From positions 124,001 to 188,000 of the IMG/VR virus record IMGVR_UViG_3300044731_002337: a stretch of DNA of 64,000 bases. The stretch is one strand, 5' to 3'. A program made the position numbers and the translations under genes. Shown here in pieces: positions 14,993 to 51,783 of the stretch. The notes beneath the pieces were generated by a model. It ran no database searches. It saw nothing but the letters and a program-made list of their open reading frames with translations, and was not told where the DNA came from. Positions within the stretch are counted from its first letter, which is position 1. Every line of letters begins with the position of its first letter.

Positions 14993-16414
14993 ATGAGTCA
15001 AGACGATCCTATGACAGCTTGGTTATTAGGAAAGACTTCACCCAAATCTTCTCCATCGCCACCACCAAGGAAACAAGCTTCCATCAAGGAAATGTTTTCG
15101 GTCAAAGCTCCAGAGCCAATTAAGAATATGTCTTCTATAGACGACTTATTCCCATTGACACGATTGACACCACAAGATGAATTTGATAAGATGCAAGTCG
15201 AGGTCCAGGAAAGAAGGGAAGAAAGGAAGAGTTCATTTGGTGTAAGGATAGGTGGAGTGAAATCGTTGGTGAGTAGTGGAGTCAAGTCAAAGCCTTATGA
15301 GATGCCACCACATTATGTGAATGAAGGACACATCAAGAAGGTCAAGGCATGGATCTTGAATACGGAGAGAACATGTCCATTAGCTTGGATTTGTGGTCCT
15401 TGTGGATGCGGAAAGACGTATATTGCTCAAAAAGCGTTGCAAGGAATTACGATCATTTCATTGGACGTTGATAGTGATATGTATACGTTGGAATATTTGC
15501 GAGAGTTATCGAATACTCGTGAATCAGTGGTCTTTGTATTGGACAATGTATCCTTTTCTGAATCTTCGGTGATGACCTTGTTGAAATTAGTAGTGCAACT
15601 ATGGGGTATCAAGAAGGATAAGAAGCAAAAGAGGCCAAAAGGACGATATGTGCCTTTGGTGTTGATTACAGAGGAGACTTATCATGCCAAGTTTAATGAA
15701 CATGTGGCGAATCTGGTGAATCACCTGAAAGTTACGGTAACACTTCCCAGTGAAACCCAAACTGAGGATATGATCAAAAAGTTGAGTTTGTCTCAAGTCA
15801 CGGCGAAGGATGTAGGATGTAATTGGCACAAGTTACGTATTCAAAAAGAGTCTGGAATTCATTATGGCATCATGTATTTGGGTAATTCGATCTTTGAGCA
15901 GTTTAAAATGTTATTCACATTAGCGAATCTGGAGAAATGGTATTACTTGTGGAGACTAGATGAGGAACAATGGATAAACATGATGTGGGAAAATATACCA
16001 AGTCGAGTATCTATTTCTCAATGGAGCAATATCACAGAATCGTTATCAGCCAATGCGATCATGTATTTGAATATTAGGGAAGAAATTGGTCGGTTTATTT
16101 GCCATGAGTTGAAACAGTATACTGAATACGTGTCTTTGCCATCCAAGGTGTATTTTCCAGCTGTGGCTTATGTGGAACGAGAATTGGTCAAGATATTACA
16201 ATTATTGAATAAGGCGGAACTGGATGAATTGATGAAGACGGAAAAGAAGAAGCGTAAAAAGATGGATACAAGTACAATGATTGAGAGACGGATACATCCT
16301 ATCGCAGCATGGAGAGGCGATTGTGATCCAGAAAAGTATGCTCGATTAGTCTTTGAAAATCCATGTCCAGACATTGTGCAAAGATATACCAGTTTATTAA
16401 AATGTACATTATAA
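14993..16414 (+). CDS. AAA+ ATPase, replication factor C large-subunit-like
   Basis: Walker A GPCGCGKT, Walker-B-like FVLDNV, PLVLITEE; TAAATG start context. Confidence 0.7.
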   Translation: MSQDDPMTAWLLGKTSPKSSPSPPPRKQASIKEMFSVKAPEPIKNMSSIDDLFPLTRLTPQDEFDKMQVEVQERREERKSSFGVRIGGVKSLVSSGVKSKPYEMPPHYVNEGHIKKVKAWILNTERTCPLAWICGPCGCGKTYIAQKALQGITIISLDVDSDMYTLEYLRELSNTRESVVFVLDNVSFSESSVMTLLKLVVQLWGIKKDKKQKRPKGRYVPLVLITEETYHAKFNEHVANLVNHLKVTVTLPSETQTEDMIKKLSLSQVTAKDVGCNWHKLRIQKESGIHYGIMYLGNSIFEQFKMLFTLANLEKWYYLWRLDEEQWINMMWENIPSRVSISQWSNITESLSANAIMYLNIREEIGRFICHELKQYTEYVSLPSKVYFPAVAYVERELVKILQLLNKAELDELMKTEKKKRKKMDTSTMIERRIHPIAAWRGDCDPEKYARLVFENPCPDIVQRYTSLLKCTL

Positions 16415-16466
16415 CGTCGTCATGCAAACTTGCGGTAACTTTTGGTTTATTCGAAGAGGTCACATT
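16413..16466 (+). repeat. Solo copy of the dispersed GGTAAC-family repeat
   Basis: 47 of 54 nt identical to 51456..51509; begins at the stop codon of the RFC-like gene. Confidence 0.8.
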
Positions 16467-16527
16467 AAGAATGAATTGTCCGATGAAAGTTGATGGATGA
16501 TTTATAATTTTTTCATTTATGTGAGAA

Positions 16528-17163
16528 ATGTATTTGGTGGGTCTAGATATTAGTTTGCGAAGTCCTGGATGGGTTGTGATTGATGAGGTGAAGAAGGTTA
16601 TACATTTATTTGGGTTACGGCAGAGAGTGAGTGATCCTTTAGGAATGTTTTGTGGGCTATGTAAAGAAGGATATACATTCAAGTTTACCCTACTATTTCA
16701 TCCATCGTTTCATTTATCCTCGGATACGGTGGCCAATCGAACCACTATCTATCAGTACATTAGTATGGCCATCATGTCAAGTTTAGTGTTAGCTATGCCA
16801 GAGCACAAAGTGAGGCCTGTTCATGTTTTGATTGAGAATTATGTGTATGGGGCTGTAGGGAGTCAAGCTATTCATTTATTATGTGAATTGGGCGGTCTAA
16901 TTCGAACCCATATTCATGCTACATTTCCTCAAGCTGTATGGGTTGAAAAGATGGCAGTATCGATTAAGAAATCGTTTACGGGATCAGGAAGAGCTAAGAA
17001 GAAGGATATGATTAATGAGTATCATCGACGGGGTTATCCTGAACTACCAAGTTCGTCTCATCCTTGGGAGGACATGGTGGACGCTTTAGCAATGGCTCTA
17101 TGTTTACGTGATAACTTGGTCAAACCTGCAATCTCATTCACATCGCAATCAAAATTGGGATAA
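16528..17163 (+). CDS. RuvC-like (poxvirus A22-type) Holliday junction resolvase
   Basis: VGLDISLRSPG, VLIENY, KKSFTGSGRAKKKDM, DMVDALAM. Confidence 0.88.
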   Translation: MYLVGLDISLRSPGWVVIDEVKKVIHLFGLRQRVSDPLGMFCGLCKEGYTFKFTLLFHPSFHLSSDTVANRTTIYQYISMAIMSSLVLAMPEHKVRPVHVLIENYVYGAVGSQAIHLLCELGGLIRTHIHATFPQAVWVEKMAVSIKKSFTGSGRAKKKDMINEYHRRGYPELPSSSHPWEDMVDALAMALCLRDNLVKPAISFTSQSKLG

Positions 17164-17525
17164 GCTGCAATGACAGTTTCCATGAAGCTTTGAGTAATAT
17201 GATCATGATAATCATTAATTTGTTTACGTAATGTTTGAAGTTTATGTTCTCCTGTCAGTCCTAAACGACTTTCAGCTTGAAGTGGCCCATTATGACGACG
17301 AACTAACTCATCCATGATAATTTTGGATTCCACTATACCCTGTAATTTGAACATGGGGTGTGATGTATTTGCAGACTCGAGTAATAAACGTGCAGCTTCT
17401 TGTACACGTTCTTGATCAAGTGCAATATCATCACGTTTGCAGCGATAGTTCTCGTGGGCCTGAAAGCTAAGTACGACAACGAGAAGGGCAAAGATGAAAA
17501 AGGCGATGGCGGTAGCAGAGGCCAT
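17058..17525 (-). CDS. Hypothetical protein with N-terminal signal/TM
   Basis: MASATAIAFFIFALLVVVLSF; the 3' end overlaps the resolvase gene. Confidence 0.6.
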   Translation of the reverse strand: MASATAIAFFIFALLVVVLSFQAHENYRCKRDDIALDQERVQEAARLLLESANTSHPMFKLQGIVESKIIMDELVRRHNGPLQAESRLGLTGEHKLQTLRKQINDYHDHITQSFMETVIAAYPNFDCDVNEIAGLTKLSRKHRAIAKASTMSSQG

Positions 17526-17549
17526 TTTAGTTTCTTTTTTTTTTTATTA

Positions 17550-18311
17550 TTAGAATGGTGAAATAGTTATTTTGTTCTCGTCTCGCAGATCCATGACCCA
17601 GTTTTGGGGTGGTAGGTCAAAATGTTTGGCAATGGTAAAATACTCGTGTGCAGGATCAGTTGGCATCATAATGCGAACTCCATTCTTGAAATTCACCGCC
17701 TGATTTTTATCTGAGGTCATTACGATCATAGGTTGTTCATGTAGAAGCCCTTGAGTAATGGGGAGACATCGTTGTAAACAAAGTAATAATTGTCGAATAA
17801 AATGTTTTTCATTATCAATTTCTTTGCTGAATGTATTGTATCCGCCAATATAATGTAACTGTGATCCATTCCAAAAAATAAGGGGATAAGTTCCAAAATA
17901 ATTAGGTATGCGGTCAATGATTCGGTAGTTACCAATGAGGGAATTGAGTTGATTGATTTTTGAATAATGGGTATGATGATACTGGGGATATTTTTTCGAG
18001 GGTAAAGGTTGGTTGAGTAGTGATTTGGCGGCATTCGAGTAGCCGCAAGTGGAAAGGCCTAATCCAAGGAATCCATGTGGAGCTGATTCAAGGATGGATG
18101 GTGGAACAAAATAATTGTAAAAATGACGCATAGCAACAAGGCAATCACCATCTGTATTGTAATCTAGCCAATTTTCCGTGTTCGGTTTACGTAAACGATG
18201 GAGTACACGTTGTTGGGGATCGACGTGACGTGTATTTACGAAATGAGACAAATCACTCAATTGGGATAAGAATGTAGGGTTATGTTCACGTGTTGTCCAA
18301 TTAAGGTTCAT
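17550..18311 (-). CDS. Hypothetical protein
   Basis: 253 aa ORF with an A-run before the ATG. Confidence 0.65.
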   Translation of the reverse strand: MNLNWTTREHNPTFLSQLSDLSHFVNTRHVDPQQRVLHRLRKPNTENWLDYNTDGDCLVAMRHFYNYFVPPSILESAPHGFLGLGLSTCGYSNAAKSLLNQPLPSKKYPQYHHTHYSKINQLNSLIGNYRIIDRIPNYFGTYPLIFWNGSQLHYIGGYNTFSKEIDNEKHFIRQLLLCLQRCLPITQGLLHEQPMIVMTSDKNQAVNFKNGVRIMMPTDPAHEYFTIAKHFDLPPQNWVMDLRDENKITISPF

Positions 18312-18346
18312 TTTTTTTTATAAATAGGGGTATAAAAAAACATCAA

Positions 18347-19777
18347 ATGGCAGCTACTTCTTCTTGGACATCACTGGAGATAGATGATAAGTCCAAAGAC
18401 ATATTTACTAATGCAACCAAGTTCAAAATACTTTTACGTTATGTATACATTCATACGTCAGGATCCACTCCAAGTTTTGAGGATGTAAAAACGGCATTGA
18501 AAACAGTTCACAAGAATAACATTTACCCAATCATGGGGGATACACCAGTTTCAACAGAGAGACCATGGCGTGAAGGTCATATTTATCTCAGTCCAACCTC
18601 AGATTTACCTGATGCCCAAATCGAGGAGATCATTGTGAGTGAATCGGTGTTAAGTGGATTTGTGACCAGAACAAGTACGGTTGCGAATTTAGTTAGCAAG
18701 TTATCATCATTTGTACCTAATGTAGATGGGAGCTTATATATGTTTATTGTACAGAACATGAATCTGAATGGGGTACCTATACCACTGTTGGATACCCATA
18801 GTGAAACAGCTTCGGCTATGATCTCGAGATTTGGATTTGTCTCCTCACAGACATTAAATATCAGTGGTATTGAAAATCCATATCCTTCCTTTAATTCTGG
18901 ATACAAGACGATTTTACATGCATTGGGTCATATGTTGGGACTTCCACATCCGTTCAAGCATGAAGATTGTGGAGCTACATTTACGGATTCATTGAATACA
19001 AATTATTCGGGTCGAACATTGAGCCGTGTACATGATGAGTTGTATGCGGACAAGCAAAAATATGATAATATGTTTGTTACGTTGGATGCTAATGGTCAAG
19101 TCGAGGGAACCAATTCATTTCGGATCAGTAATTTAATTGGAACCAAACCATTGGATATGTTTACTAATTTTCAAAATGCGGCGTTCGATTATACATGTGT
19201 CTCCAAAACAGCCCCACTTCGAGAAGGAGCTAAACGTATGATGGATGTGTCACCGGATGATGTTCGTTTAGGTTTTACAAATGATAATGTGGTATTAATG
19301 CGTCGAAACTTAATGAATTACGACAAGTCAAAGTCGGTTTCTGGGGCTAGTGGAATATTTGGGGTTACATTGGAAAAGGGTACTACAGGTCGAGTACCGG
19401 ATACAAAATGTGATAACGACGCATGTAAGCCTCCCAAACCAACAACACCTCCTCCTGGGACAAATACTGGACTAACAACGGTGAAGACTTCATCCAAACT
19501 GAGTGTAGGGGCCATTATTGGTATTGTATTAGGGGTACTAGCTTTCTTACTCATTGTTGGATATTTTGGCTATCGATATCGTAAAAATAAAATGAAACCC
19601 AAGACGCCATTATTACCTGCAACGAAAGGAGTTGTACCTGCAGCTAATGTAGCACCTGAACTCTATCAAGGTCCTGCTGCAAATCTTGAAATCCTAAAAC
19701 CTATGGAACCTTTAGCTAAGCCAGATCCTAAAGCCAAACCAGTAGAAGGCGAACGTATCGATTGGGATAATATTTAA
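18347..19777 (+). CDS. Pappalysin/M43-like metzincin, probably inactive, type-I membrane protein
   Basis: HALGHMLGLPH (HExxHxxGxxH with Glu replaced by Ala), AAFDY at the NxMDY Met-turn position, C-terminal TM AIIGIVLGVLAFLLIVGYFGY. Confidence 0.75.
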   Translation: MAATSSWTSLEIDDKSKDIFTNATKFKILLRYVYIHTSGSTPSFEDVKTALKTVHKNNIYPIMGDTPVSTERPWREGHIYLSPTSDLPDAQIEEIIVSESVLSGFVTRTSTVANLVSKLSSFVPNVDGSLYMFIVQNMNLNGVPIPLLDTHSETASAMISRFGFVSSQTLNISGIENPYPSFNSGYKTILHALGHMLGLPHPFKHEDCGATFTDSLNTNYSGRTLSRVHDELYADKQKYDNMFVTLDANGQVEGTNSFRISNLIGTKPLDMFTNFQNAAFDYTCVSKTAPLREGAKRMMDVSPDDVRLGFTNDNVVLMRRNLMNYDKSKSVSGASGIFGVTLEKGTTGRVPDTKCDNDACKPPKPTTPPPGTNTGLTTVKTSSKLSVGAIIGIVLGVLAFLLIVGYFGYRYRKNKMKPKTPLLPATKGVVPAANVAPELYQGPAANLEILKPMEPLAKPDPKAKPVEGERIDWDNI

Positions 19778-19975
19778 CCTTGACTAATAAATATGGATCA
19801 TTTTCTAATTTTTTTTTTGGTTCTATTGTTTGGAAAAAAAAAAGGTGGAGTCCAACACCTGACAAAGTGATTAGATTAGAACATGTGTGTACATACATTA
19901 TACATCATAACATCTTACCCATTAAGCTACGCACCAAACACGGCATAATATTGGGGGTACTTAATCCATCCACCT

Positions 19976-20635
19976 TTTTTCCAATTGAAAAACATTTTGT
20001 ACTTCTTTTATCGCCGTGAAAAAATATTTTATTCAAATTGAAAAGACATCGTTACTTCTTCTATTGAGATGGAAAAACATTTTTACTTCTTCGATTTACA
20101 TGGAAAGAGATTTTTATCACCTCGAAATACTTTTGTTCCTAATGAAAAACATTTTTACCTCTTCTATTGCCATGAAAAAATATTTTCAACACCTCGAGAA
20201 ACTTTTTTCTAAATGGAAAAACATTTTTATTCCAGTTGAAAACATTTTTACTTCTTTTATCACCGTGAAAAAACATTTTATTCCAATTGAAAAACATTTT
20301 TTACTTCTTTTATCCAAATGGAAAAATATTTTCTATCACCTCGAAAGGTATTTTACTTCTTTTATCCAAATGCAAAAACATTTTTATTCCAATTGAAAAA
20401 CATTTTTTTACTTCTTCTATTGCCATGAAAAAACATTTTTAACACCTTGAACAACTTTTATTCCAATTGAAAACATTTTTACTTCTATTATCGCCGTGAA
20501 AAACATTTTATTCCAATTGAAAACATTTTTACTCCTTTTATTGCTATGGAAAAACATTTTATTCCAAAGTGAAAACATTTTTTACTTCTTGTATCACCTC
20601 GAAATACTTTTATTCCTGATGAAAAACATTTATTC
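19976..20635. repeat. AT-rich interspersed repeat array with core (T/G)GAAAAA(C/T)ATTTT
   Basis: About 20 cores counted by eye, alternating with TTCCAATT and TACTTCTTTTATC(G/A)CCG linkers; non-coding interval between convergent genes. Confidence 0.9.
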
Positions 20636-20649
20636 GAATGAATAAGAAG

Positions 20650-21015
20650 TTACGTGTCAGAGTCTTCTGTGAGAAAAAGGGCTTGCATAATTTGTTTGGC
20701 GTACCAGTGACAATGGAAACGGTCCAGCATTGTGACTAATGCGGATTCGACGCCACCCAGAGTTCGGTTCCAATCGTTTCGATAGAGAAAGAATACGGCC
20801 TTGTGTTGAAAAGATTTGTGTTCATCATCGTCATCATGCCATGTAATTGTATACATGAGTGTATTGCTATTATGTACTTCGAAACAGCCAAAGAAAATAT
20901 GCCACATCCAATTTTCATCTTTATCATCCATGGAAAAGGGTAATTCAGAACCGATTGCCTTGGAACGAATAAAATCACAAAACTCATCAATCATACTTGG
21001 TACAAAACATGCCAT
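20650..21015 (-). CDS. Hypothetical protein
   Basis: 121 aa ORF. Confidence 0.55.
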   Translation of the reverse strand: MACFVPSMIDEFCDFIRSKAIGSELPFSMDDKDENWMWHIFFGCFEVHNSNTLMYTITWHDDDDEHKSFQHKAVFFLYRNDWNRTLGGVESALVTMLDRFHCHWYAKQIMQALFLTEDSDT

Positions 21016-21097
21016 TCTCCTTATATAGGTTTTTTTTTACCTTCCTATCATGTTATTGTATGTTGTTTTGAGGTTATACGTGAGAAATAAAATAGTT

Positions 21098-21742
21098 TTA
21101 TGAATATGGTTTGATTCTGTACTCCTTATCCATGACCCAATGAGAAACATAAGGTATCATGGCATTAAGGGTTGGATAATTATGAATGATGAGGACATGT
21201 TGGTTCAACGCCTCATGTTGAAGTGTCTCTGCAAGTGTGTATGGATTCATTTCCGGTTTGAGGACATAGAGAGACAAGTCCTTGTAAGAGATATTGAATT
21301 CAAATAGAGAACATTGGACGAGATGAATTTGTCCATCAGGGGGTGAGTTGAGGACCGAGCTAAATGATGGTTTGCTGGGAACAATTTGTCCATGTTCATT
21401 GTATTCATGTGAGGATGAATTCCAAGGTCCAGACACACAAGGTCCATTAAGAAATTCGGGTAAATTCACACTCGCATCATATCGTTTTACAACCAAGTGA
21501 GGAAAGACAAAACTCCATCGTAAAGTTGAATAAATGTATCCAGCATTGATAGGTTTCTCAAATAAGAGTAACACATCAAAGTAAAAAAAGTCCTGATTCG
21601 GTGGATGGACTTGTTTGATCCACCATTCATGAAAAGACTGTTCACGGGACTCTTGTCTTCGGTATTTGAATAACCATGACAATAAAGTTTCAATTGTACT
21701 CTCATCACATCGAGGAACCCGCGCATACCAACAAGAAGACAT
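21098..21742 (-). CDS. Hypothetical protein with faint resemblance to an HUH Rep N-terminus
   Basis: YARVPRCDESTIETLLSWL resembles Rep motif I (FLTYPxC); catalytic HUH and YxxK are not retained. Confidence 0.5.
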   Translation of the reverse strand: MSSCWYARVPRCDESTIETLLSWLFKYRRQESREQSFHEWWIKQVHPPNQDFFYFDVLLLFEKPINAGYIYSTLRWSFVFPHLVVKRYDASVNLPEFLNGPCVSGPWNSSSHEYNEHGQIVPSKPSFSSVLNSPPDGQIHLVQCSLFEFNISYKDLSLYVLKPEMNPYTLAETLQHEALNQHVLIIHNYPTLNAMIPYVSHWVMDKEYRIKPYS

Positions 21743-21822
21743 GAATAAATTTGACTATGTACTGATTCACCATTCTTGGCGGAAAATCCAATAAAAAAAG
21801 ATTCTTCATATGGAAAAAAAAA

Positions 21823-22191
21823 ATGTGGCTTATTATTTTGGTAAGTGTCATTGTGTTATTAGTATTGGATTTGATGTATTTAATGATTATTAAGCATCAT
21901 TTTAATGACCAGGTGAAACGAGTGCAAGGAGAAAATATCCGGTTAAATTATTATGGAGCTGCTATATGTTATATGATTTTATTATTTGGTTTGCATTACT
22001 TTATCTTGTATCCAGAAAAAGGGGCATTTGAAGCCTTACTATTGGGATTGGTGATTTATGGAGTTTATGAATCTACAAATATGGCTATATTCAAGGACTG
22101 GACATGGTATATCTTTATGGTCGATACATTGTGGGGTGGAGTTTTATTGGCGAGCACTACAATTATTGTTCAACGTATAATCCCCCCATAA
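21823..22191 (+). CDS. DUF2177-family membrane protein
   Basis: LLGLVIYGVYESTNMAIFKDW...VDTLWGGVL signature. Confidence 0.85.
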   Translation: MWLIILVSVIVLLVLDLMYLMIIKHHFNDQVKRVQGENIRLNYYGAAICYMILLFGLHYFILYPEKGAFEALLLGLVIYGVYESTNMAIFKDWTWYIFMVDTLWGGVLLASTTIIVQRIIPP

Positions 22192-22708: not shown

Positions 22709-22779
22709 GGATAATAAATAGAATAGATCACATAAGGAACAAATCGGAATACCTAAATAAATTGTTGTTTATTATTGGT

Positions 22780-25700
22780 TTATGATGAGCAAGTATTGCA
22801 AACAACTGGTGTAGTAAAATTGAATTTGGTGGGCTTATCAATGGTGCGGAAATAGTAGCTGGCTGTTTTGAGGCCAAGATTCCAAGCAAAGCACCAGTAC
22901 TTGACAACTTCGATCGCCATATTCTCTCCACGTTTCATGTAGACATTGAGACTGATACTTTGGTCGACAAAACGAGAGCGATCGGCAGCCATGAGAGTAA
23001 TTTGGGCAAGTGGGATATCTACAATGGATCGGTAACGTTTCTTAATGTAATCCGGAATGGAAGCAATGTCGGTGAGTGATCCATTATTCGCTAGAATTTC
23101 ATCGTGAACAGGAATGGTAGATTTGGCATCAAATTTCCAAAGACCTGCTTCTTTGAGATCTCGTACCAGGTATTTGTTGAAGACATTGTATTCTCCAGTG
23201 TTCATGTATCGTTTGAAGCTACAGGCCAGGGCAGGTTCAAAGCATTCAAAGTTTCCTAAAATGATGGAAGTACCTGCAGTGGGCATATGAGCCATTAACA
23301 GGGAGTTGAGCATTTTGTTGGGTTTGGTCTTGATATCATGACGTAATTGGTCCCAGTTCCATCCGACACTTGTAGTAATATAGTCATGATGGGGTCTCTT
23401 TTCATAAATCTTTTGAGCCTGATTGTATTTGTCCCATAAATCTTGTTGTAAAATACCGGATTCAATGGGTGATCCAGCGATACTAGGATAATTGCCCCGT
23501 TCTTGAGCCAGGTCATGGGAACCTTTTAGGGCGGCATAATACATGGTTTCAGCGATTTGATAATTGAGACGTTGTGCTTCTTTTGAATCAAAGTCGAGTT
23601 TGAGGATCATAAACACATCTGCGAGTCCTTGAATGCCAATGCCAATAGGTCGATGTCTCATGTTGGAACGCCTTGTAGATTCCAGGGGATAAAAATTGAG
23701 GTCAATGACTTGGTTCATATGGTACACTAGATTATATACCACTTCATACAATTCTTGAAAATCGTATTGATCATCATGGATAAATGCCTTGAGGGAAACG
23801 GAGCACAAATTACAAACCGCGGTTTCTTCTGGTGAAGAGTATTCAATGATTTCTGTGCATAGATTAGATGATTTGATGGTACCGAGATTTTTTTGGTTGG
23901 ATTTGTGGTTACAGTGATCTTTGAATAGGATGTAAGGTCCGCCGGATTCGACTTGTGATTTGACAATGGCGAGGACAAACTCTCGAATGGGAACTTGTGC
24001 TTCATAGAGCCCTTGTGATTCATACTGGAGGTAGAGTTGTTCAAAAGCTTCACCATGCACGTCATCTAGCCCTCGACACTTTTGAGGGTTCATGAGGGAC
24101 CATACTTGTGGTTGATTGTGTTGATAATCTAGAATGATACGTTTCATGAACAAGTCGTTAACCCATAGAGCATAGAATAGGTCAGTAGCTGAAATGGTAT
24201 TGGCGGTCAAGGGGGATTTCAATTCTAAGAATTCCAAAACATCTGCATGCCATGGTTCTAGATAGACTGCAATGCTTCCTTTACGTTTACCACCACCATT
24301 ATGAGCGACCATACAGGATGTGACATAGGATGGGTCGGAGGACCTTTCCATTTCCAGGTCGAAGCAGTCATCAATGGTGGGTGGGCTGTGAATTACATTG
24401 TGAATAGGTAGACAGAGGTAGTTTTGGACTTGTATGCATGGTGTGAGGCGGCGACCATCTTGATCCTTGGGTGGCCATATCATACGGTATTCATTAGGAT
24501 AAATCTCCTCAATCAGAGCAAAAGAATATCCAAGTCGGTTAGCACAATATTCCAACGAATGCTTCTTTTGGGGGGAAACATTCTTTAACGTGGGACCTTG
24601 AAGTTCAAGACCTTCCATGAAATCGGCGACTTGGTCTAAGGGGGCGAATAGAATGGAGGCAGGAATGTCTTGTCGATTACATTGAAGTAGACCCATTAAT
24701 TGACCTTCAGGGATAATGATTTCCGTAGTGGAAAGACAGCGAACAGATACAATGGAAGATAACCAGGTTCGATCAATGTCTGGGCTTAGGAGGTGAAAGG
24801 TGATGAGTCCTTCTTGACATTGCCAGTTCATATCTGCGGTGATGAGGCCCAAGAGTTTTAAGAGATTTGAGTCGACATCAGGGATTCGTTTTTGGAGTTC
24901 AATGGTGTTGCAAATAGCGAGCCAGTGTTTGCGGGGATCGATTTCGTGGATGGTGGTGTAAAAGGGGAGAGCTCTTGATCCAAAGGTGTTGTCAATGACG
25001 AGAATAGGGTGAGAATCGGTGATGCCATGTGATACACGGTGATTAGGGAAAACTAAATGGTGGAATTGGAGTGATTTCTTGGTGGAAATAATTTTCTGAA
25101 TATGGTGAAAGTCTCCAAAACGGTTCATGACAAGATCATTGACTTGTAAGGATTGAATTTTGCGCCAACCAGTGGAAGTCATGACCCGGGTATCACCTTG
25201 AAAGCATTGGTCGACATAGCATGCTACAGAGTTATACACTTTGAGCATGGGTCCTACACCTCCAGTGACTCCATTAGTACCCTTGATATACGAATTCTTG
25301 CTACGGGTATTGTGGATGTTGATGCCAATGCCACCCGAGTGTTTGGAGATGATGCTACATTGCTTCCATCGATCAGCAATACCTTCAATGGAATCATCCC
25401 CAGCATATAAGAGAAAACATGAACTCATTTGGGGATGCATGGTTCCCGCGTTAAAGAGAGTAGGTGTAGCCATGATACATTTGCCCAGAGATAAATAATG
25501 ATACAACTGTATAGCTCTCTTGGTATTCATAGGGTTCAGGGCAATCGCTATTCTCATCCACATAAATTGTGGTTCCTCCAAAGGTACTGACACCATGATA
25601 TGCTGCCCATTATGTTCTACTCGCTTGTAAGTGTTGAGAAGGTATTTGCCATTAATAAGTTGGGTAATCGCCGCACAGTCAAATATAATGTTTCGATCAT

Positions 25701-27770: not shown

Positions 27771-27838
27771 GTATTTCTTTTTTTTGAGGTGATAATTTTA
27801 ATAAATTTACAGACATGGGAGGAAAATGATGTTTGGTT

Positions 27839-37883: not shown

Positions 37884-37965
37884 GTTACCTCTCCAAATGA
37901 ACCTAAATGTTACCTCTCCAAATGAACCTAAATGTTACCTCTCCAAATGAACCTAAATGTTACCT
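37884..37965 (-). repeat. 25-bp tandem repeat (3 copies plus a partial), GGTAAC family in reverse orientation
   Basis: (gttacctctccaaatgaacctaaat) x3; reverse complement ggtaacatttaggttcatttggagaggtaac matches ggtaacttctggttcattcgaagaggtaac at 51.4 kb. Confidence 0.9.
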
Positions 37966-41900: not shown

Positions 41901-43109
41901 CCACAATAAAGCCTTGCATACGGCTACTTTGTTTCGATTTGCTAGTCTTCTTAAACTTGGTATCCACTGAATTGGGGGTTTTACCATATTGGGCATTCTT
42001 GGGGATTAGTTTGCGATACTTTTCAAAGTGGAATGCAGAGATTTGGTTTTGGAGGTTTCGCCAGGCACATTGATTGGTCACGTTGCCACAAGACGCTTCA
42101 TTGGAAAGTTTACATTTGCTCAGTTTCTGGTTAATGAGTTGAAGCTGGGCCCGGTATTGTTGCCGTTGTTGAATATTGAGTTGTTTTCGTTCTTCGCTGG
42201 TTAAGGATTCTTTTTGAAAGCAAACTTTAAAATCTGGATGAATGAATCCCTTGTATAGATATTGGGAAAGAATAATGGGGTCCTTGGATTGTTGCAATTT
42301 CATTTCGAGTAAAAGTTTGCTTTGGAGGACATTTTTGAGCATCTTGGTCCAATCATTGGGGTATTGTTTAGAGCCATTTTTGGTAGGGAAAGTACTATTA
42401 GGTCTAGTGGTGAGTGCCGGGACAGCTAGAGCCGAAAACATTCGAGCCTTGGGTAAGTTGTATTGTCCAAGTCCCATAATATGCATCATTTGTTCATTCT
42501 TCGAAATGTCCTCCAAGAGTTTTTGAATTTCAAATGGACCAAACGAAATGGGCTTCCATGATGGATTGGATTGGTAAAGTTGAAAATCAGTCTTGGAAAG
42601 TGTTACAACTCCCCGTATAATATTATCATGACCCGATTCTGTTGTCCATTTGATATAGGATTTACCACATTCACATGCCCTGAAGAAACGAGTATATTTA
42701 AGTAACGTATTGAGTCGTTTTTCAGAGGGTAGTTGAAGAACTTTCTCGCACATATGGGAAGTAATGCGGAGGCGTTGACAATAAAAGCAAACTAGATTGA
42801 GTATTTTCAAAAGGGTTGACATGGCGCCTACATGGAAACAGGGAATAGGTAATTCCATATGTCCAGTATGTCCAGGACAATTATGGGTTGTCTCTCCACA
42901 TTGCTCACATAATGAATCCCATGATTTACATCCCAAAACACCTACAAGAAGAAAAGTAAAGAAAGATCAAAGGGCGAAAAAAAAAATGTACCTGAAGTAA
43001 GATCTGTATTGGTTTTGATTTCTAATACACTTTGTTTACGAACACGATCCGAGTCAATAAGGAAACATTGTAATGCATCTACTTCACGTAATGGTGGAAG
43101 TGAATCCAT
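38029..43109 (-). CDS. rpb1: RNA polymerase largest subunit (RPB1) with fused C-terminal guanylyltransferase-like domain; exons complement(join(38029..42941,42992..43109))
   Basis: CEQC...CPGHTGH, CFYC, NRAPTLH, FNADCDGDE, GTSQSGYLEKK, PGEAIG, EVYTQGNLKSPHSSG, LGSGYHF; exon 1 supplies RVRKQSVLEI; spliced length 5031 nt is in frame; an upstream in-frame ATG at 43178 is possible. Confidence 0.93.
42942..42991 (-). other. Spliceosomal-type intron in RPB1 (50 nt, phase 1)
   Basis: CAG|GTACAT...polypyrimidine...TTGTAG|GTG; joins TDLTSG to VLGCKSWDSLCEQC. Confidence 0.85.
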
Positions 43110-43419: not shown

Positions 43420-43485
43420 TTCTCTTTTTTTTTTATTTTACTTTGCTTATGGTTTTTTTTTTCTCCGATAGGGGATAGAATCATA

Positions 43486-44259: not shown

Positions 44260-44262
44260 TCT

Positions 44263-45915
44263 TTATGTGGTTTGTTGTTCTGATTCGTCTTGGTTCTTTT
44301 TTTGTCTACTGTAATCTTTAAATTTTGGGACGTCTATACGGAAGAGGCGTTGCACATTTTCGCGTAAACTTTGCTTTAGCATTTCACAATTACTTTCTTC
44401 AAGTGCAGTGGGTAGTTGGCCCTCAATAAAAAATCGATAGTAAGCATACATCTGCACATGATTTTTTGAAAACTTTTCTTTTTCCATATATTTACCATTC
44501 AAAAACTGTGTTTGGTATTCTCCAAATTCGTCAGCATGTTTTGTAAGGTACATTTGATGCAAGGTATACTTACCGTCTTCTTTTTCTTTTTCGTCACCTA
44601 ACAATTCAAGTTGCGATAAACCATTTTTGAAAACATCTTGAAGAATAGTGACATCCGATCCATTTTTGTATTTGTAATCTGCGTTAAAATATTCACGTAA
44701 GGATGCAAGGTACACTCGAACTCGATTTTTGATTCGGAGATATTGCTCAGGCGAAAAGTGTTGGTCAGGATTCTGTTGTTTCTGTTCTTTTAGATATTGG
44801 CCAATGTTTTGAAGGCATGTTGCGAATAGAGCTTTAGGTGATGGAATTGCACCGGTAATGCCTAGGTTTTCATATTCACCAGTTTGGTTCAACTTGGCAT
44901 AAGGAAACAACTTGTTTATAAAGTATTGTTCAATTTCATCCTTACCGATGGAAAGGGAAGACCAGTTGATCTCGATTTCTCTAGCCCAATATTGATCTTC
45001 AAACAAATAGTTTGCCATTTTTCTGGCGTGTTTATAGTGGTTCGCAGCAAGTTCTTCATGACTCTTAGCATTTTCGCCGCCGCCTTTTGGTTTTTTATCA
45101 TCAAAGCGTTCGATTTTTTGTTCGAATGTTAGGAAATTCTTATCCCAACTCCGGTAAGTGTAGCCAAGCGTGAAGCCACCTCGTAATGACGCAATACCCA
45201 ACCCAACAGCAGAGATGACTATAGATAAGATCCATAATGCATTGGTTTGAAACAAGCTACCATATTGAACGGAAAAGATGAGAAAGGTAATCGTAACAAA
45301 AAACACGTGTAAAGGGATGATGGTAAACAGACCATCACTCCAGCTATAGTGAGTACCATATTTCCGGTTGATGAAGAAGTAGAGAAACAAGGGGATAAAA
45401 ATTAGGATGAATAAAGTTGAATACATCATACCTTCTGTGCTACTTGAGTTCATACTTACAATGAAAAAAATACCTGCTAAATAGAATAGTGGCATAGCAA
45501 GCCATAACTCTTTCCCTCCACCAGGCCAGCTTAACATCCATGTCGATGCAGACCATACCTTCGCTCTGAAACTCTTTTTTGTTGCCTTTTCTTTGTAGAG
45601 AAGAGGTTTCTCTTCTGATGTAGTTTGTCCGTCGTCTGGTTTGTCTGTGACTGGTACTTCATTTGGTTGTGGAGGTAGTGCTGGAGGTACTGCTGGAGGT
45701 AGTTTTGAACGTATTGCTGGAGTCTCTGTCATTGGTACTACAGTTCTCTTAGTCAATGGTGATTTTGATGCTGTTCGTGGAGCCGCGCCGAATGTGAAAG
45801 GGATTGCTGGAGTCTCTGTCATTGGTACTACAGTTCTCTTAGTCAATGGTGATTTTGATGCTGTTCGTGGAGCCGCGCCGAATGTGAAAGGGATTGCTGT
45901 TTCGGGAGTGTCCAT
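44263..45915 (-). CDS. Multi-TM membrane protein with duplicated Pro-rich N-terminus
   Basis: Start MDTPETA at 45915; four hydrophobic segments; 30-aa duplication. Confidence 0.7.
   Translation of the reverse strand: MDTPETAIPFTFGAAPRTASKSPLTKRTVVPMTETPAIPFTFGAAPRTASKSPLTKRTVVPMTETPAIRSKLPPAVPPALPPQPNEVPVTDKPDDGQTTSEEKPLLYKEKATKKSFRAKVWSASTWMLSWPGGGKELWLAMPLFYLAGIFFIVSMNSSSTEGMMYSTLFILIFIPLFLYFFINRKYGTHYSWSDGLFTIIPLHVFFVTITFLIFSVQYGSLFQTNALWILSIVISAVGLGIASLRGGFTLGYTYRSWDKNFLTFEQKIERFDDKKPKGGGENAKSHEELAANHYKHARKMANYLFEDQYWAREIEINWSSLSIGKDEIEQYFINKLFPYAKLNQTGEYENLGITGAIPSPKALFATCLQNIGQYLKEQKQQNPDQHFSPEQYLRIKNRVRVYLASLREYFNADYKYKNGSDVTILQDVFKNGLSQLELLGDEKEKEDGKYTLHQMYLTKHADEFGEYQTQFLNGKYMEKEKFSKNHVQMYAYYRFFIEGQLPTALEESNCEMLKQSLRENVQRLFRIDVPKFKDYSRQKKNQDESEQQTT
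45713..45899. repeat. Exact 90-bp tandem duplication within the CDS
   Basis: AIPFTFGAAPRTASKSPLTKRTVVPMTETP occurs twice; DNA offset is 90 (45713 and 45803). Confidence 0.92.
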
Positions 45916-45982
45916 TTTCTCTTTTTTATTAATATGATTTTTTTTCAGGGGGAAAGGAAAAAAGAATTGTGGGTGATAAGAA

Positions 45983-46288
45983 ATGAGGTATGGATATCGT
46001 GAAGAACGGAAGTATATTGAAGAAACTAGGCCCAATTCTTATCTAGAACTTTCCCCGCCACCAGTGAATCAAGGTACAGCTGAAGTAAAATGGTGGCGCA
46101 TCAGTGATATTTCATCATTTCTCGTATGGTATAAACGTCCATGTAAATATATAATTCATGAGGTGTTAAATGAGGGGGAGGTTCAGACGCCGCCATGGAA
46201 AGATGATTATGTAAACTTTATCAAACTGGCAGACAGAAAGTCAATGTATGAGTATTATTATGTTATGACCAATAAAGGATATATTTAA
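45983..46288 (+). CDS. Hypothetical protein
   Basis: 101 aa; the stop codon lies in the MITE left TTAA. Confidence 0.55.
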   Translation: MRYGYREERKYIEETRPNSYLELSPPPVNQGTAEVKWWRISDISSFLVWYKRPCKYIIHEVLNEGEVQTPPWKDDYVNFIKLADRKSMYEYYYVMTNKGYI

Positions 46289-46437: not shown

Positions 46438-46490
46438 TTAATAAACTATTTTTTTTTTATTTTTATTGTGAATCACACACATGTATTTGT

Positions 46491-48245: not shown

Positions 48246-48343
48246 TTTTTTTCGGTAAGTCTTCTTTTTGTTTTTTTTTATGCAGTGTGTAAAAAAATTT
48301 TTCAAGGACTCAAGAACATGTAGATAAAAAAAAAAGATTATGT

Positions 48344-48790: not shown

Positions 48791-48871
48791 TTATATATAC
48801 TTTTTTTTTTCTAATATTTGTGACTGGATCTTTTTTTATTTCGCGTTTGTTCCGATCTGGAGGGGACATAG

Positions 48872-49798
48872 TTGGAAGGAAACAATTTGATCATGCATCA
48901 TTTATGGAAGCAGTTAATGATGAGCAAGGTATATATGACGGATGTGTTTAAAGTTTGGAAGTTTGAGATGTATATCAAGGATCGTCGACCAATTACATCA
49001 GTTCATTTGGCAAAGAATTCGCAAGGTGCCTGGTGTGTGTTCAAGACGATTAATGTGGGCCGTTGTATGTCCATGTTTGTTGAAGTCTTGGTGTTACGTG
49101 TCATGCAAAATACGCCGGGAATAGTACGTATGGAAGAGTGGGCATACAATGTGGCACATGATGTAGTGATTATTCAATTTCCTCGAATGGTGATGGATTT
49201 GCAGCAGTTCATGTATAAGTGGCGTCATCATGCAAGGGTACGTCGAAAATATATGTTGGCCAATGTAGCGGGTCTATTGGAGACATTGGTGGAAGTGCAT
49301 CGCCATGGTATTGTTCATCGAGATCTCAAGCCCGCCAACATTTTATTGGATGACAAGGAATATTGGTTTTTGCATGATTTTGGAAATTCGATATGGGAGC
49401 ATAAGCCGGGACAAGAGTATGCTACAGACATGGCAAATACAGTAACACACCGTCCTCCGGAATGTATGGGTAAAGATCGAATGGTAGCCTATGATCAAAA
49501 GATTGACGTTTGGGCTTTGGGAATCATATGTTATGAATTGTGGTTTGGATCATTACCTATTGAAAGCTACGAGTACAATGTGATTCGTGATTTCTATCTA
49601 CTAAATCCTGTGGAAACATGGGCAACTTTATGGTCCTTACCTGAACCATGGATGAACTTTTTTTACAAGTGTCTCCAATCCAACCCTCAACATCGATTTT
49701 CAGCATATCAACTCATGGCATTACCTTTATTCAAGGAGGTCTTACCTGGTAATGCCAAGAATTCCCGATCTCCTATCGCCATTCCATTACATACCTGA
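48872..49798 (+). CDS. Ser/Thr protein kinase
   Basis: VFK, HRDLKPANIL, DFG, THRPPE, DVWALG; no canonical Gly-rich loop. Confidence 0.92.
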   Translation: MEGNNLIMHHLWKQLMMSKVYMTDVFKVWKFEMYIKDRRPITSVHLAKNSQGAWCVFKTINVGRCMSMFVEVLVLRVMQNTPGIVRMEEWAYNVAHDVVIIQFPRMVMDLQQFMYKWRHHARVRRKYMLANVAGLLETLVEVHRHGIVHRDLKPANILLDDKEYWFLHDFGNSIWEHKPGQEYATDMANTVTHRPPECMGKDRMVAYDQKIDVWALGIICYELWFGSLPIESYEYNVIRDFYLLNPVETWATLWSLPEPWMNFFYKCLQSNPQHRFSAYQLMALPLFKEVLPGNAKNSRSPIAIPLHT

Positions 49799-49804
49799 CG
49801 AGTG

Positions 49805-51783
49805 ATGGATAACAATATATGTCCTGTTTGTTCAATTCAATGTGCCAATGTCGAGTCATTTCGTGACCATGTAGCCCATGAACATGAAGACTATAAACAT
49901 TTTGCATGTGAATTGCATATTGCGGAACAACCTTGCAAGGCTAGATACAAGTATAAGAAGGATCTACTCATTCATCAAAAGAAAGTGATTCATGATCAAG
50001 TGAGGCAATATGTATCTCCAGCGTATCATCAACTAAGATTAAGGACAAAACATGCTACGTCATGGGTGCATTGGACCTCATTGTATGTTCAATATAAATC
50101 TCCCAGTGATCCGGTATTGTCGAATGAGCAAAAAATGTCAGTGGAGCAGTTGATGAGTAGGCTGAAGCAGGAGGAGATGTGGGTGGAAGAAGCAGTTTAT
50201 GATTCATGGCAATTTGAAGAAATGGTGGAGCAATTGGAGAATTATTGGAATCAGGCCAAGACAATTGGAAATCAATTACGTCTATTATTTTGGCATGTCC
50301 TGTATAAGTTCTGTGTGGATCCTTTACTTTCGGATTCGGTGGTTCATTTTTTACACAAGAGGTCCAGTAAATATTTTATCAAGGCGACCAAAATTGTGCA
50401 AGGATCATTAGGTGTACAAATCATGGACCCTTATCAAATGGTGGAACTACGTTATCGAATCTTGGTAGAACTTCAAAAGCAACAGCAAGAAGTATTGGAT
50501 CCATTTATTCTTCAATACTATCGTGAGAGATCATCTAAGATGCCATTACTCGAGTTTGGATTGAAATTAAGGTGTTGGATAGATTTGATGATTCGGTTTA
50601 CCAATATTCCTATGAGAATTCAAGCGACCAAGGAACTTCATTTAGGGTATCCGTTTCGAAAGACGGATGTGGCCGAACATCATGTGGCAAGATTATTATA
50701 TGAGAATGGTGTCTTTACCCGTTTATTCATGTTTGATAAAGTGGGCAAAACAGGTAAGCATTAATGATTTTTTTGTTTGTTTGTTTGTTGTTAACTATGC
50801 ACAAAAAAGGTGCTCATCGTCCAATTCGATGTCCTTTACCAGGATTTATAACTCCTTACTTATTATTCTACATTAAGTATTGTCGACCAACGGAAAAGGA
50901 GAATTCCTTGGTATTTCTCAATGCGACGGGCAGTGCATGGAAACAAGCATCAAGGGATATTAAGATGTATATGCAAGATGTATTGGACATTCAAGTGAAT
51001 GCATTAGATCCTTCAGGTCGTTTTGTTCATGGGTCAAGGTCTATCATGTTGGCGAATTATGCATTGCGTGTACGATTTGATCCATTGAAGTTACAACAAT
51101 TTGCTACCTTGATGAGACATTCGTTTGCGACGATGAATTCTTATTACTTGTTATGGACGGATTGGGCGACAGCGAGACTTGCCATGTCCGACTTTAATCA
51201 AGCGTTTGGTTTATCTGCCCCCGAAGAAAAACCATGTGATTTTTCAGCCTTTGATGTCCATTTTTCTTTCACTCAGGGTATAATGGAAGAAAAAGAAGTA
51301 TCGCCACAGATTGAAACATTATCATGTAAACCTGCAGTAAATTCTCGTTCATTCGAAGAGGTAACATCGTCATTCGAAGAGGTAACTTCTGGTTCATTTG
51401 AAGGGGTAACATCGTCATGCAAACCTTTGGTAACTTCTGGTTCATTTGAAGGGGTAACATCGTCATGCAAACCTTTGGTAACTTCTGGTTCATTCGAAGA
51501 GGTAACATTGTCATGCAAACCTGCGGAAACATCGTCATGCAAACCTGCGGTACAAGAGCAAAAGAGTGGAAATGGTTGTGACAAGTGTGGTAAAGTAATG
51601 ACGATTTATGGTCCTTATGGGAAGAGGAAGCATGTGAAGCAATATGGATGTTATTGGTATGAATGTAAGGATTGTGAGTTGAAGAAATGGATACCATTAG
51701 GATATATGACGGAATATAGTCATTCACGAAAATCCAAGAATCACGATAAGATTATGGCATTTATTAAAGCTTCTTTGAAATAA
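49805..51783 (+). CDS. C2H2 zinc finger plus tyrosine-recombinase-like protein; exons join(49805..50753,50810..51783)
   Basis: N-terminal CPVC...HVAHEH and C...HQKKVIH; TNIPMR, DK, HGSR, MRH and SYY give the R-K-H-R-H-Y set; two track ORFs join in frame (1923 nt). Confidence 0.7.
50754..50809 (+). other. Spliceosomal-type intron (56 nt, phase 1)
   Basis: CAG|GTAAGC...TTAAC branch-like...AAAAG|GTG; the spliced product DKVGKTGAHRPIRCPL aligns with the intronless paralog DDKNMNSHLPIIVPV. Confidence 0.85.
51314..51550 (+). repeat. Tandem array of 48-bp GGTAAC-family units and sub-units inside the CDS
   Basis: VTSGSFEGVTSSCKPL repeats with degenerate flanking copies. Confidence 0.9.

What the first reader, a model, noticed from the sequence alone, without database searches (positions are those of the whole stretch)
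16413..51550. One GGTAAC-N4/5-GGTTCATTYGRAGAGGTAAC motif family at three distant loci, always sense-oriented at gene 3' ends
Seen: a solo 54-nt copy starts at the RFC stop codon (16413..16466, 47 of 54 identical to 51456..51509); a 25-bp x3 tandem lies about 60 nt downstream of the RPB1 stop on the minus strand (37884..37965); a 48-bp array is translated inside the 3' part of the recombinase-like gene (51314..51550). GGTAAC recurs as a direct repeat. Inference: a mobile minisatellite, a 3'-end RNA signal, or binding/recombination sites for the zinc-finger recombinase that carries the array.
Basis: partly seen in the sequence, partly recalled or inferred. Interest (0 to 1): 0.6.

Follow-up and report, generated by a model that had tools for sequence, protein, structure and literature searches.

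The report
Private scattered minisatellite family in giant virus
A lake-water giant virus carries its own family of about 24-base tandem repeats, all ending in GGTAAC, scattered through genes and spacers in both orientations. It behaves as a DNA-level repeat that proteins tolerate in flexible linkers, not as a transcript-end signal.

Summary
All three window sites exist as described, 47 of 54 bases match between two of them, and no shuffle gives a motif hit.

The window is part of a 294,773-bp giant-virus contig from lake water. Across the contig the family has about 70 units at 20 loci. There are three unit types, A, B and C, of 23-27 nt, and all end in GGTAAC.

"Always sense, at gene 3' ends" fails genome-wide:
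- Thirteen loci lie inside ORFs, six sense and seven antisense.
- Unit A is translated in three frames and unit B in four, so this is a DNA repeat, not a protein repeat.
- Arrays inside ORFs always have a 24-nt period in a stop-free frame. Arrays with 23- or 25-nt periods occur only outside ORFs.
- Four ORFs that read into an array in the sense direction stop in its first hexamer or first unit (in the P-loop gene, TAA lies in a degenerate GGTAAC). This explains the apparent 3'-end link.

Paralogue and orthologue comparisons mark solo copies as insertions. Syntenic relatives and public collections lack the units. No hairpin or Rfam match was found.

Best reading: a lineage-private, GGTAAC-anchored compound minisatellite, spread by templated copying and slippage and filtered by selection. 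The host gene does have a tyrosine-recombinase fold with a zinc ribbon, but nothing ties it to the repeats.

The parts
16413..16466 (+). Solo compound copy: one B unit followed by one A unit. It starts inside the TAA stop codon (16412..16414) of the upstream ORF. The hexamer before it is a degenerate TATAAC.
   Evidence: 47 of 54 identical to 51456..51509. The orthologous spacer in relative L053 is 25 nt, against 113 nt here.
14993..16414 (+).
   Evidence: Only weak AAA_14, AAA_22 and NPHP3_N hits, and no PDB match. One syntenic orthologue, P0071, at 30% identity.
36701..36730 (-). Solo A unit preceded by GGTAAC, translated in the sense frame (QVTSCSIEEVA) inside ORF 36508..37830.
   Evidence: Contigs from three other studies' lake metagenomes also carry it.
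36508..37830 (-). 440-aa ORF with its own 10-aa LP[ST]KEE-type repeats. It hosts the solo A unit and lies just downstream of the 25-nt array.
37884..37965 (-). Intergenic A-type array with a 25-nt period, 3.3 copies, 100% identical. It lies 63 nt after the RPB1 stop and 53 nt before the next ORF's start. All six frames contain stops.
   Evidence: Short-read contigs break in it, and variant unit junctions appear in two other samples.
38029..42936 (-). RPB1 gene (largest subunit of RNA polymerase).
   Evidence: Pfam Rpb1 domains 1-5. The best PDB matches are eukaryotic Pol II RPB1.
51314..51554 (+). Compound array of alternating A and B units (48-nt super-period, about 10 units, including one 21-nt A/B hybrid). 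It is translated as an S/T/E-rich linker.
   Evidence: It occupies the hypervariable linker of the protein family, which the model of a homologue leaves disordered (pLDDT 24-30).
49802..50753 (+). Exon 1 of the tyrosine-recombinase-like gene (open frame; the true start codon is not fixed).
   Evidence: 30% identity to the N-terminal half of the full-length homologue P0010. It ends at ...DKVGKT-G.
50754..50809 (+). Candidate 56-nt GT..AG spliceosomal-type intron that splits a Gly codon.
   Evidence: Removing it restores the conserved DKVGKTGAHRPIRCPL. Relative L050 has a 46-nt GT..AG insert at the same position. Homologue P0005 lacks it.
50810..51783 (+). Exon 2. It holds the HxxR...RH...Y catalytic core, the repeat-filled linker and a C-terminal zinc ribbon.
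   Evidence: Fold match to XerH, Cre and XerA at Z 11-12.

Best explanation
The motif belongs to a dispersed compound minisatellite that is private to this virus lineage. Its units are 23-27 nt long, come in three types (A, B and C, plus A/B hybrids) and all end in GGTAAC.

It propagates as DNA. One or a few units are copied from an existing array into a new place, most likely by template switching or ectopic gene conversion primed on GGTAAC- or TAAC-like microhomology. Local slippage or unequal recombination then amplifies the seed into an array with its own variant.

Selection decides where copies persist:
- Intergenic spacers, where any period is tolerated.
- The very end of a gene. One sense frame of the unit reads TAA inside GGTAAC, so an ORF running into a unit in that frame ends there.
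- Flexible linkers or loops of proteins, where only 24-nt periods in the four stop-free frames survive and are translated as hydrophilic 8-residue repeats.

What is shown and what is inferred:
- Shown: the census, the orientations, the frames, the rule linking period to coding status, the overlap with stop codons, the insertion-like gaps, and the absence from relatives.
- Inferred: the copying mechanism and the role of GGTAAC as its anchor.

No sequence-specific function for the virus is needed to explain the pattern.
For: - Census: about 45 A units (nhmmer E <= 0.01), about 20 B units and 5 C units at 20 loci.
- Orientation and frames: 13 loci lie in ORFs, six sense and seven antisense. A is read as SGSFEEVT, VTSSNEPE or LPLRMNxK. 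B is read as SSCKPAVT, (I/N)VMQTCGN, VTAGLHD(D/N) or LPQVAMTM. That is three of the four stop-free frames for A and all four for B.
- Period rule: every array inside an ORF has a 24-nt period. The 23- and 25-nt arrays have stops in all frames and lie outside ORFs.
- Anchor hexamer: first units are nearly always preceded by GGTAAC or a close variant such as TGTAAC, CGTAAC, GGTCAC or TATAAC.
- Stops: four ORFs that enter arrays in the sense direction stop in that hexamer or in the first unit.
- Insertion-like gaps: solo A is a 10-aa gap between conserved blocks of two 43%-identical paralogues. Solo B is an 8-aa gap against a paralogue.
- Transfer between loci: the same B-to-A junction occurs at 16413 and in the 51314 array. 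The TTCTCG spacer variant is shared by four loci.
- Local amplification: identity within arrays is 94-100% and each array has its own variant.
- Private to the lineage: the units are absent from syntenic relatives L050 and L052 and from IMG/VR and JGI metagenome scans.
Against: - No empty-site allele was found, so the exact insertion junctions are not seen, including whether GGTAAC or TAAC pre-existed at the target.
- The paralogues used for the gap test are divergent (27-43% identity).
- GGTAAC is conserved across three otherwise different units. That could instead reflect a protein or enzyme that recognises it, which would mean a function.
- Copy-number variation in populations is only hinted at. 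The variant 23-nt unit junctions in two samples could come from an unassembled locus.
- The contig is about 55% of the genome by CheckV's estimate, so the census is incomplete.
Confidence: 0.6

Rival explanations
1. The arrays are cis-acting binding sites for a viral DNA-binding protein. They would work like the dispersed 'homologous regions' of baculoviruses (enhancers or replication origins), or as sites for the neighbouring zinc-ribbon tyrosine-recombinase-like protein, with GGTAAC as the recognised core.
For: - GGTAAC is the one element shared by unit types A, B and C.
- GTAAC is an instance of the palindromic pattern GTNAC.
- Arrays are spread over the whole contig at about one per 15 kb.
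- One array sits in a gene with a tyrosine-recombinase fold, and a paralogue lies next to it.
Against: - Thirteen of 20 loci are inside ORFs.
- The units have no inverted-repeat arms or palindrome of the kind used by hrs or by recombinase core sites, and they do not fold.
- Relatives that keep the recombinase-like gene in the same synteny lack the units.
- Outside the arrays GGTAAC is not over-represented. There are 94 and 73 copies on the two strands, against 67 and 49 expected from composition, and the array copies account for roughly the excess.
Confidence: 0.15
2. The motif is a 3'-end formation or termination signal read on the RNA in the sense orientation.
For: In the window all four copies are in the sense orientation and lie near gene 3' ends. 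Genome-wide, four ORFs stop where a sense array begins.
Against: - Seven in-ORF loci are antisense. Others lie in the middle of a gene, for example 775 residues into a 1,997-aa ORF.
- Two loci lie between divergent genes.
- No secondary structure forms (z +0.2 to +1.3) and Rfam gives nothing.
- The TAA in one sense frame explains the abutment to stop codons.
Confidence: 0.03
3. The repeats are selected at the protein level, for example as Ser/Thr-rich, possibly glycosylated spacers, and spread by exon-like shuffling of a peptide module.
For: The most used frames (VTSSNEPE, SGSFEEVT, SSCKPAVT) are hydrophilic and rich in Ser and Thr. They sit in linkers.
Against: - The same DNA is read in seven different frame and orientation combinations that give unrelated peptides (LPLRMNEK, NVMQTCGN, VTAGLHDN).
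- Seven loci are non-coding, with 23- or 25-nt periods among them.
Confidence: 0.07
4. Sense A units, which begin with GT and end with AG, act as splice-donor-like or mini-intron (introner-like) sequences in a virus that has spliceosomal introns.
For: - A 56-nt GT..AG intron exists in the very gene that carries the array.
- AG|GTAAC resembles a 5' splice site.
- Removing whole 24-nt units would keep the reading frame.
Against: - B and C units do not end in AG.
- A single unit is far shorter than the two candidate introns seen (46 and 56 nt).
- All in-ORF arrays are free of stops and have a 24-nt period. Spliced sequence would not need either property.
- Half of the coding copies are antisense.
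Confidence: 0.05

Closest known systems
Compound minisatellites and megasatellite families of Candida glabrata and other yeasts (PMC2566889, PMC2919712)
   Same: - Tandem units of two intermingled types share a common end.
- The same motif occurs in non-homologous genes.
- The period is a multiple of three inside genes.
- Short direct repeats bracket the unit, as in the slippage-origin model.
- The proposed spread is motif transfer between arrays plus ectopic recombination.
   Different: - Yeast motifs are found in coding regions and kept as one peptide motif under purifying selection.
- Here the same DNA is read in up to four frames and in both orientations, and it also forms non-coding arrays with periods that are not multiples of three.
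- The host is a virus genome of a few hundred kb.
Rickettsia palindromic elements (PMC1779305, PMC10969869)
   Same: A DNA-level repeat inserted in frame into many unrelated ORFs and tolerated as extra peptide segments.
   Different: By my own knowledge, RPEs are about 100-150 bp, palindromic and not tandemly amplified. The units here are 24 nt, non-palindromic and tandem.
Baculovirus homologous regions (hrs) (PMC4535591)
   Same: Several dispersed arrays of one short tandem unit around a large dsDNA virus genome.
   Different: - hrs units contain an imperfect palindrome, and the cited paper shows that they work as enhancers and origins. That they lie between genes is my own knowledge.
- These units have no palindrome, and two thirds of the loci lie in ORFs.
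Repeat invasion of pithovirus genomes (PMC10664404)
   Same: A lineage-specific burst of one repeat family in a giant virus, absent from close relatives.
   Different: By my own knowledge, pithovirus repeats are longer, MITE-like inverted-repeat units that form large non-coding blocks. They are not 24-nt units embedded in reading frames.

Membership tests
Dispersed (compound) minisatellite family | Head-to-tail tandem units of about 10-100 bp | tested here: met
   Units of 23-27 nt with up to 12 copies and 94-100% identity.
Dispersed (compound) minisatellite family | The same unit at several unlinked loci or in non-homologous genes | tested here: met
   20 loci over 294 kb. The host ORFs are mostly unrelated.
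Dispersed (compound) minisatellite family | Two unit types intermingled in one array | tested here: met
   A and B alternate at 51314..51554. B+A and A+B+B composites occur at two other loci.
Dispersed (compound) minisatellite family | Copy-number polymorphism between individuals or strains | tested here: inconclusive
   Short-read contigs break in the array. Two samples hold variant 23-nt unit junctions, which may be allelic or may come from an unassembled locus.
Baculovirus-type homologous regions | Imperfect palindrome in each unit | tested here: not met
   Only a central TTCGAA in unit A. Folding is no better than shuffles.
Baculovirus-type homologous regions | Intergenic location | tested here: not met
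   13 of 20 loci are inside ORFs.
Baculovirus-type homologous regions | Enhancer or origin activity | not testable with these tools
   This needs a replication or reporter assay.
MITE / DNA transposon | Terminal inverted repeats | tested here: not met
   Unit ends are direct GGTAAC repeats. No inverted arms are present.
MITE / DNA transposon | Target-site duplication | tested here: inconclusive
   GGTAAC-like hexamers flank solo units, but no empty site is available to show duplication.
Hairpin-type transcript 3'-end signal of giant viruses | Stable palindromic hairpin downstream of stop codons, in the sense orientation | tested here: not met
   z-scores of +0.2 to +1.3. Orientation and position are mixed.
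Tyrosine-recombinase core site | Two inverted binding arms around a short spacer, kept together with the recombinase | tested here: not met
   The repeats are direct only. Relatives with the orthologous gene lack the units.
Tyrosine recombinase (the host protein, not the repeat) | Catalytic-domain fold | tested here: met
   In the model of homologue P0005, residues 87-334 match XerH, Cre and XerA at Z 11-12 (rmsd 3.5-4.8 Å over 175-190 residues). Foldseek puts XerH first with probability 0.99 and E 0.024. Mean pLDDT is only 59.7.
Tyrosine recombinase (the host protein, not the repeat) | Catalytic residues R-K-H-x-x-R-H/W-Y | tested here: inconclusive
   H89-x-x-R92, then H119 after 26 residues and Y128 after 8 more, are invariant with canonical spacing. 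The first Arg (RIQAT) and the Lys (DKVGKT) were assigned by eye in exon 1. Activity was not tested.
Introner / mini-intron | GT..AG ends, a length within the genome's intron range, and no coding constraint | tested here: not met
   Only sense A units have GT..AG. A unit is 24 nt, against 46-56 nt for the candidate introns. In-ORF arrays are all stop-free with a 24-nt period.

The most novel reading that the evidence does not exclude
GGTAAC is the recognition or priming site of a dedicated copying activity. This could be a virus-encoded nicking enzyme or recombinase (the zinc-ribbon tyrosine-recombinase-like protein and its neighbouring paralogue are candidates), or a polymerase prone to template switching at this hexamer. 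Such an activity would insert 24-nt cassettes flanked by GGTAAC. That would make this an ultra-short mobile element, far below MITE size, which writes new 8-residue modules into viral proteins in either orientation.
Probability: 0.12. Interest if true: 0.7.

Novelty: new variant of a known kind. Interest (0 to 1): 0.4.

Why it matters
This is a clean natural example of one short DNA repeat being written into many unrelated viral genes, in both orientations and in seven reading frames. It shows that linker and loop sequences of giant-virus proteins can arise from a selfish or neutral DNA process rather than from selection on the peptide.

It has practical uses:
- It warns annotators that ORF ends and 'low-complexity domains' in such genomes may be by-products of the repeat.
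- It explains why assemblies break; this contig ends in one such array.
- It offers strain-typing (VNTR) markers for a virus seen in several lake studies.

If GGTAAC proves to be an enzymatic target, it would define a new and very small class of mobile sequence.

Tried and rejected
- IMG/VR scan with the A core 18-mer gave 13 single hits. I estimate that as about what chance gives; the tool reports no expectation for collection scans. No record had several copies.
- IMG/VR scan with the B unit gave 0 hits.
- Two scans of JGI metagenome contigs, one for two A units in tandem and one for GGTAAC-A-GGTAAC, gave 0 hits.
- The search for related loci with RPB1 in IMG/VR found no relatives.
- The genome search on loci L050 and L052 failed because those records are not held.
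- Pfam, PHROGs and PDB sequence searches of the array-bearing protein gave nothing. Only the fold search identified it.
- Pfam and PDB searches did not support 'RFC' for ORF 14993..16414.
- ssDNA folding of four arrays showed no structure beyond shuffles. Rfam on the whole window gave nothing.
- No terminal inverted repeat was found between the two contig ends.
- Capsid_NCLDV (PF04451) was not found on this contig. The tool's own control did not register the family in any genome, so this says nothing about classification.
- No RNA runs hold the virus, so 3'-end mapping and splicing could not be tested.
Full report
**1. The observation**

All three sites are as described.
- The 54-nt solo copy at 16413..16466 matches 51456..51509 at 47 of 54 positions. 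The best match in 20 shuffles of the window was 31.
- The 25-nt x 3.3 array at 37884..37965 is perfect and lies 63 nt beyond the RPB1 stop on the minus strand.
- The array at about 51314..51554 has a 48-nt super-period and is translated in ORF 50764..51783.
- The 20-nt core has 10 hits in the window at up to 3 mismatches, against none in 100 dinucleotide shuffles.

**2. Context**

The window is bases 124001-188000 of a 294,773-bp IMG/VR virus record that CheckV rates 55% complete.
- Gene content: it encodes RPB1, a family-B DNA polymerase and a ribonucleotide reductase.
- RPB1 relatives: only three are close (65-79% identity). The next drop to about 35% and carry no names.
- Classification: I leave this open as a large virus of a eukaryote of uncertain placement. 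The test for the nucleocytovirus capsid was uninformative.
- Where it occurs: the same sequence is present at about 99-100% identity in lake-water metagenomes from several independent studies.

**3. Census**

I laid the whole contig in the script box and searched it with patterns, a profile and Tandem Repeats Finder. The family has three unit types, all ending in GGTAAC:
- A: TTCTGGTTCATTCGAAGAGGTAAC, with 23-, 25- and 27-nt variants.
- B: ATCGTCATGCAAACCTGCGGTAAC.
- C: a 23-nt unit in one array at genome 288808-288932.

There are about 45 A units, about 20 B units and 5 C units at 20 loci. GGTAAC-ended arrays are 12 of the tandem arrays TRF lists on the contig, and most of those with a 20-30-nt period. 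A 21-nt A/B hybrid unit sits in the window array, and B+A or A+B+B composites occur at three loci. A and B therefore recombine.

**4. Orientation and frames**

- Thirteen loci lie inside ORFs, six in the sense orientation and seven antisense.
- A is read as SGSFEEVT (the window gene and ORF 36508..37830), as VTSSNEPE (four ORFs, including a 1,997-aa one) and as LPLRMNEK (one ORF).
- B is read as SSCKPAVT, (I/N)VMQTCGN, VTAGLHD(D/N) and LPQVAMTM.
- For both units exactly four of the six frames are stop-free. Three of these are used for A and all four for B.

One DNA sequence giving seven unrelated peptides cannot be a protein-level repeat. It is a DNA-level family.

**5. Period rule**

Every array inside an ORF has a 24-nt period. 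The 23-nt and 25-nt arrays have stops in all six frames and lie only outside ORFs. This is what selection on translated insertions would produce. It also argues that the in-ORF arrays are translated rather than spliced out.

**6. Why the family looks tied to 3' ends**

In one sense frame GGTAAC reads ..GG TAA C... Four ORFs that enter an array in the sense direction stop in the hexamer before the first unit, or in the first unit:
- The P-loop gene of the window (TA-TAA-C, stop at 16412..16414).
- ORF 111..632 (GAT-TAA-C).
- ORF 40784..41584 (TTG-TGA-C).
- ORF 288925..289944, which stops in the first C unit.

Other non-coding loci lie between divergent genes (genome 6093 and 293601) or between tandem genes (window 37884). 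The 3'-end association is therefore a consequence of the stop codon in the unit plus selection. It is not a signal.

**7. Insertions**

- The 1,997-aa ORF and its 43%-identical tandem paralogue align from end to end. The solo A copy with its flanking hexamer is exactly a 10-residue gap between conserved blocks.
- A solo B copy in ORF 26598..27995 is an 8-residue gap against one paralogue.
- The orthologue of the P-loop gene in a syntenic relative is followed by a 25-nt spacer. Here the spacer is 113 nt and contains the 54-nt copy.
- In the recombinase-like family the array fills a linker that differs in length and sequence in every homologue. The linker is disordered in the model.

**8. Private to the lineage**

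Two syntenic relatives share the gene order RPB1, kinase, recombinase-like, NUDIX, RPB2. Neither has an A, B or C unit. Scans of IMG/VR and of JGI metagenome contigs found no arrays elsewhere. Within arrays identity is 94-100% and each array has its own spacer variant, while some variants (TTCTCG) are shared by four loci. This pattern fits seeding by transfer between loci followed by local amplification.

**9. Population data**

I laid contigs of four other samples on 3,001 bases of the window, within the operators' 6,000-letter limit.
- The solo copy at 36701 is present in three of the samples.
- Contigs break in the 25-nt array, as expected for k-mer assemblies.
- Two samples also hold unit junctions with a 3-nt spacer in place of the 5-nt one, giving 23-nt units. 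This may be array polymorphism or a locus missing from this contig.
- No RNA run holds the virus.

**10. No RNA or DNA structure**

Four arrays folded as single strands are no more stable than shuffles (z +0.2 to +1.3). Rfam finds nothing in the window.

**11. The gene that carries the array**

- ORFs 49802..50764 and 50764..51783 are two exons of one gene. Removing 50754..50809 (56 nt, GT..AG) restores the conserved DKVGKTGAHRPIRCPL.
- A relative has a 46-nt GT..AG insert at the same codon, and another homologue is continuous there.
They were aligned and searched separately by reference.
- A model of the continuous homologue P0005 (mean pLDDT 59.7) matches the catalytic domain of XerH, Cre and XerA at Z 11-12. 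Its C-terminus resembles RPB9/C11-type zinc ribbons weakly (Z 3-4).
- The HxxR...H...Y residues are invariant with canonical spacing.
- A paralogue lies next to it at window 52364..53404 (-).

**12. Mechanism**

- Shown: a DNA-level, bidirectional, frame-independent family with GGTAAC-delimited units, insertion-like gaps, array-specific variants, and coding-dependent filtering.
- Inferred: new copies arise when a replicating or repairing 3' end switches to an existing array at GGTAAC/TAAC microhomology, copies one or more units and returns. Slippage or unequal recombination then changes copy number.
- The stop codon TAA followed by C offers such a microhomology at a neutral place. This would explain copies that start at stop codons.

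**13. Comparison with what is known**

- The closest analogues are the compound minisatellites and megasatellite families of Candida glabrata. Their motifs share a common end, occur in unrelated genes and are thought to move between arrays (PMC2566889, PMC2919712). Those motifs are kept as one peptide motif, which is not the case here.
- Rickettsia palindromic elements share the in-frame, DNA-level insertion into ORFs but are long and palindromic.
- Baculovirus hrs share the dispersed arrays but are palindromic, intergenic and functional (PMC4535591).
- Pithovirus repeats share the lineage-specific burst (PMC10664404).
- I found no report of a comparable family in giant viruses.

**14. Verdict**

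It is a variant of a known kind of sequence, the dispersed minisatellite, in an unusual host genome. It has two unusual properties: it is used in seven frame and orientation combinations, and one hexamer anchor is shared by three unit types. Interest is moderate. It would be higher if GGTAAC proved to be an enzymatic target.

Noticed in passing
window 50754..50809; L050 9860..9905: Candidate spliceosomal-type intron (56 nt, GT..AG, TTAAC near its 3' end) that splits a Gly codon of the recombinase-like gene. A 46-nt GT..AG insert sits at the same codon in a relative, and it is absent from homologue P0005. This suggests a nuclear phase for this virus clade.
   Followed up: partly
whole contig; switch near genome 282,000: The plus strand has G 22.4% and C 15.6%. 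GC skew is +0.10 to +0.26 in every 20-kb window up to about 280 kb, whichever way the genes run (+0.24 for plus-strand ORFs, +0.16 for minus-strand ORFs). It reverses to about -0.15 to -0.35 over the last 12 kb. This may mark a replication origin or terminus.
   Followed up: partly
window 22780..26124 (-): The ribonucleotide reductase large subunit is 1,114 aa, with a weak Hint-domain hit at residues 307-354 (20.7 bits, below Pfam's 28.4-bit cut-off) between the N-terminal and barrel domains. This may be an intein.
   Followed up: no
window 38029..42936 (-): RPB1 has a C-terminal extension with a weak match to the mRNA capping enzyme catalytic domain (E 0.0023). Most of its metagenomic relatives carry PF01331 fused to RPB1.
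   Followed up: no
genome 1..113 (contig left end): The contig begins inside a perfect 27-nt x 4.2 A-type array. The assembly probably broke in a longer array. No terminal inverted repeat with the other end was found.
   Followed up: partly
window 19975..20631: A 650-bp AT-rich block of nested tandem repeats (periods of about 22, 31, 50-53, 72 and 103-106 nt) built on a recurring '...GAAAAACATTTTT...' unit. It has almost no long ORF and the lowest GC in the window (0.33). It is unrelated to the GGTAAC family.
   Followed up: no
window 37201..37684 (ORF 36508..37830, -): About a dozen 10-residue LP[ST][KR][ED]E[LI]-type repeats (30/60-nt period) give a sub-threshold HNH_repeat hit. On the plus strand their DNA unit contains TTCCTTGGA(A/G)GGTAA. 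This loosely resembles the A core in the opposite orientation to the neighbouring 25-nt array. The A profile does not detect it.
   Followed up: partly
window 52364..53404 (-): A second, divergent paralogue (27-30% identity) of the tyrosine-recombinase-like core lies convergent with the first and about 0.6 kb from it. It has no repeat array.
   Followed up: no
window 45713..45899 (ORF 44263..46035, -): A perfect 90-nt x 2.1 tandem duplication inside a 590-aa ORF, next to 12/24-nt repeats. It is unrelated to the GGTAAC family.
   Followed up: no
genome 10034..16027 and 16046..22060 (-): Two adjacent paralogous genes of about 2,000 aa (43% identity) with weak DUF3638/DUF3645 hits. One carries a solo A unit and the other a solo B unit.
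   Followed up: partly
genome 41584..42501: An ankyrin-repeat ORF (41701..42501, -) is bracketed by two A-type arrays in the same orientation: 12 units forming its first 100 codons and a 23-nt x 4 array just past its stop. Its real start may lie downstream of the array.
   Followed up: no
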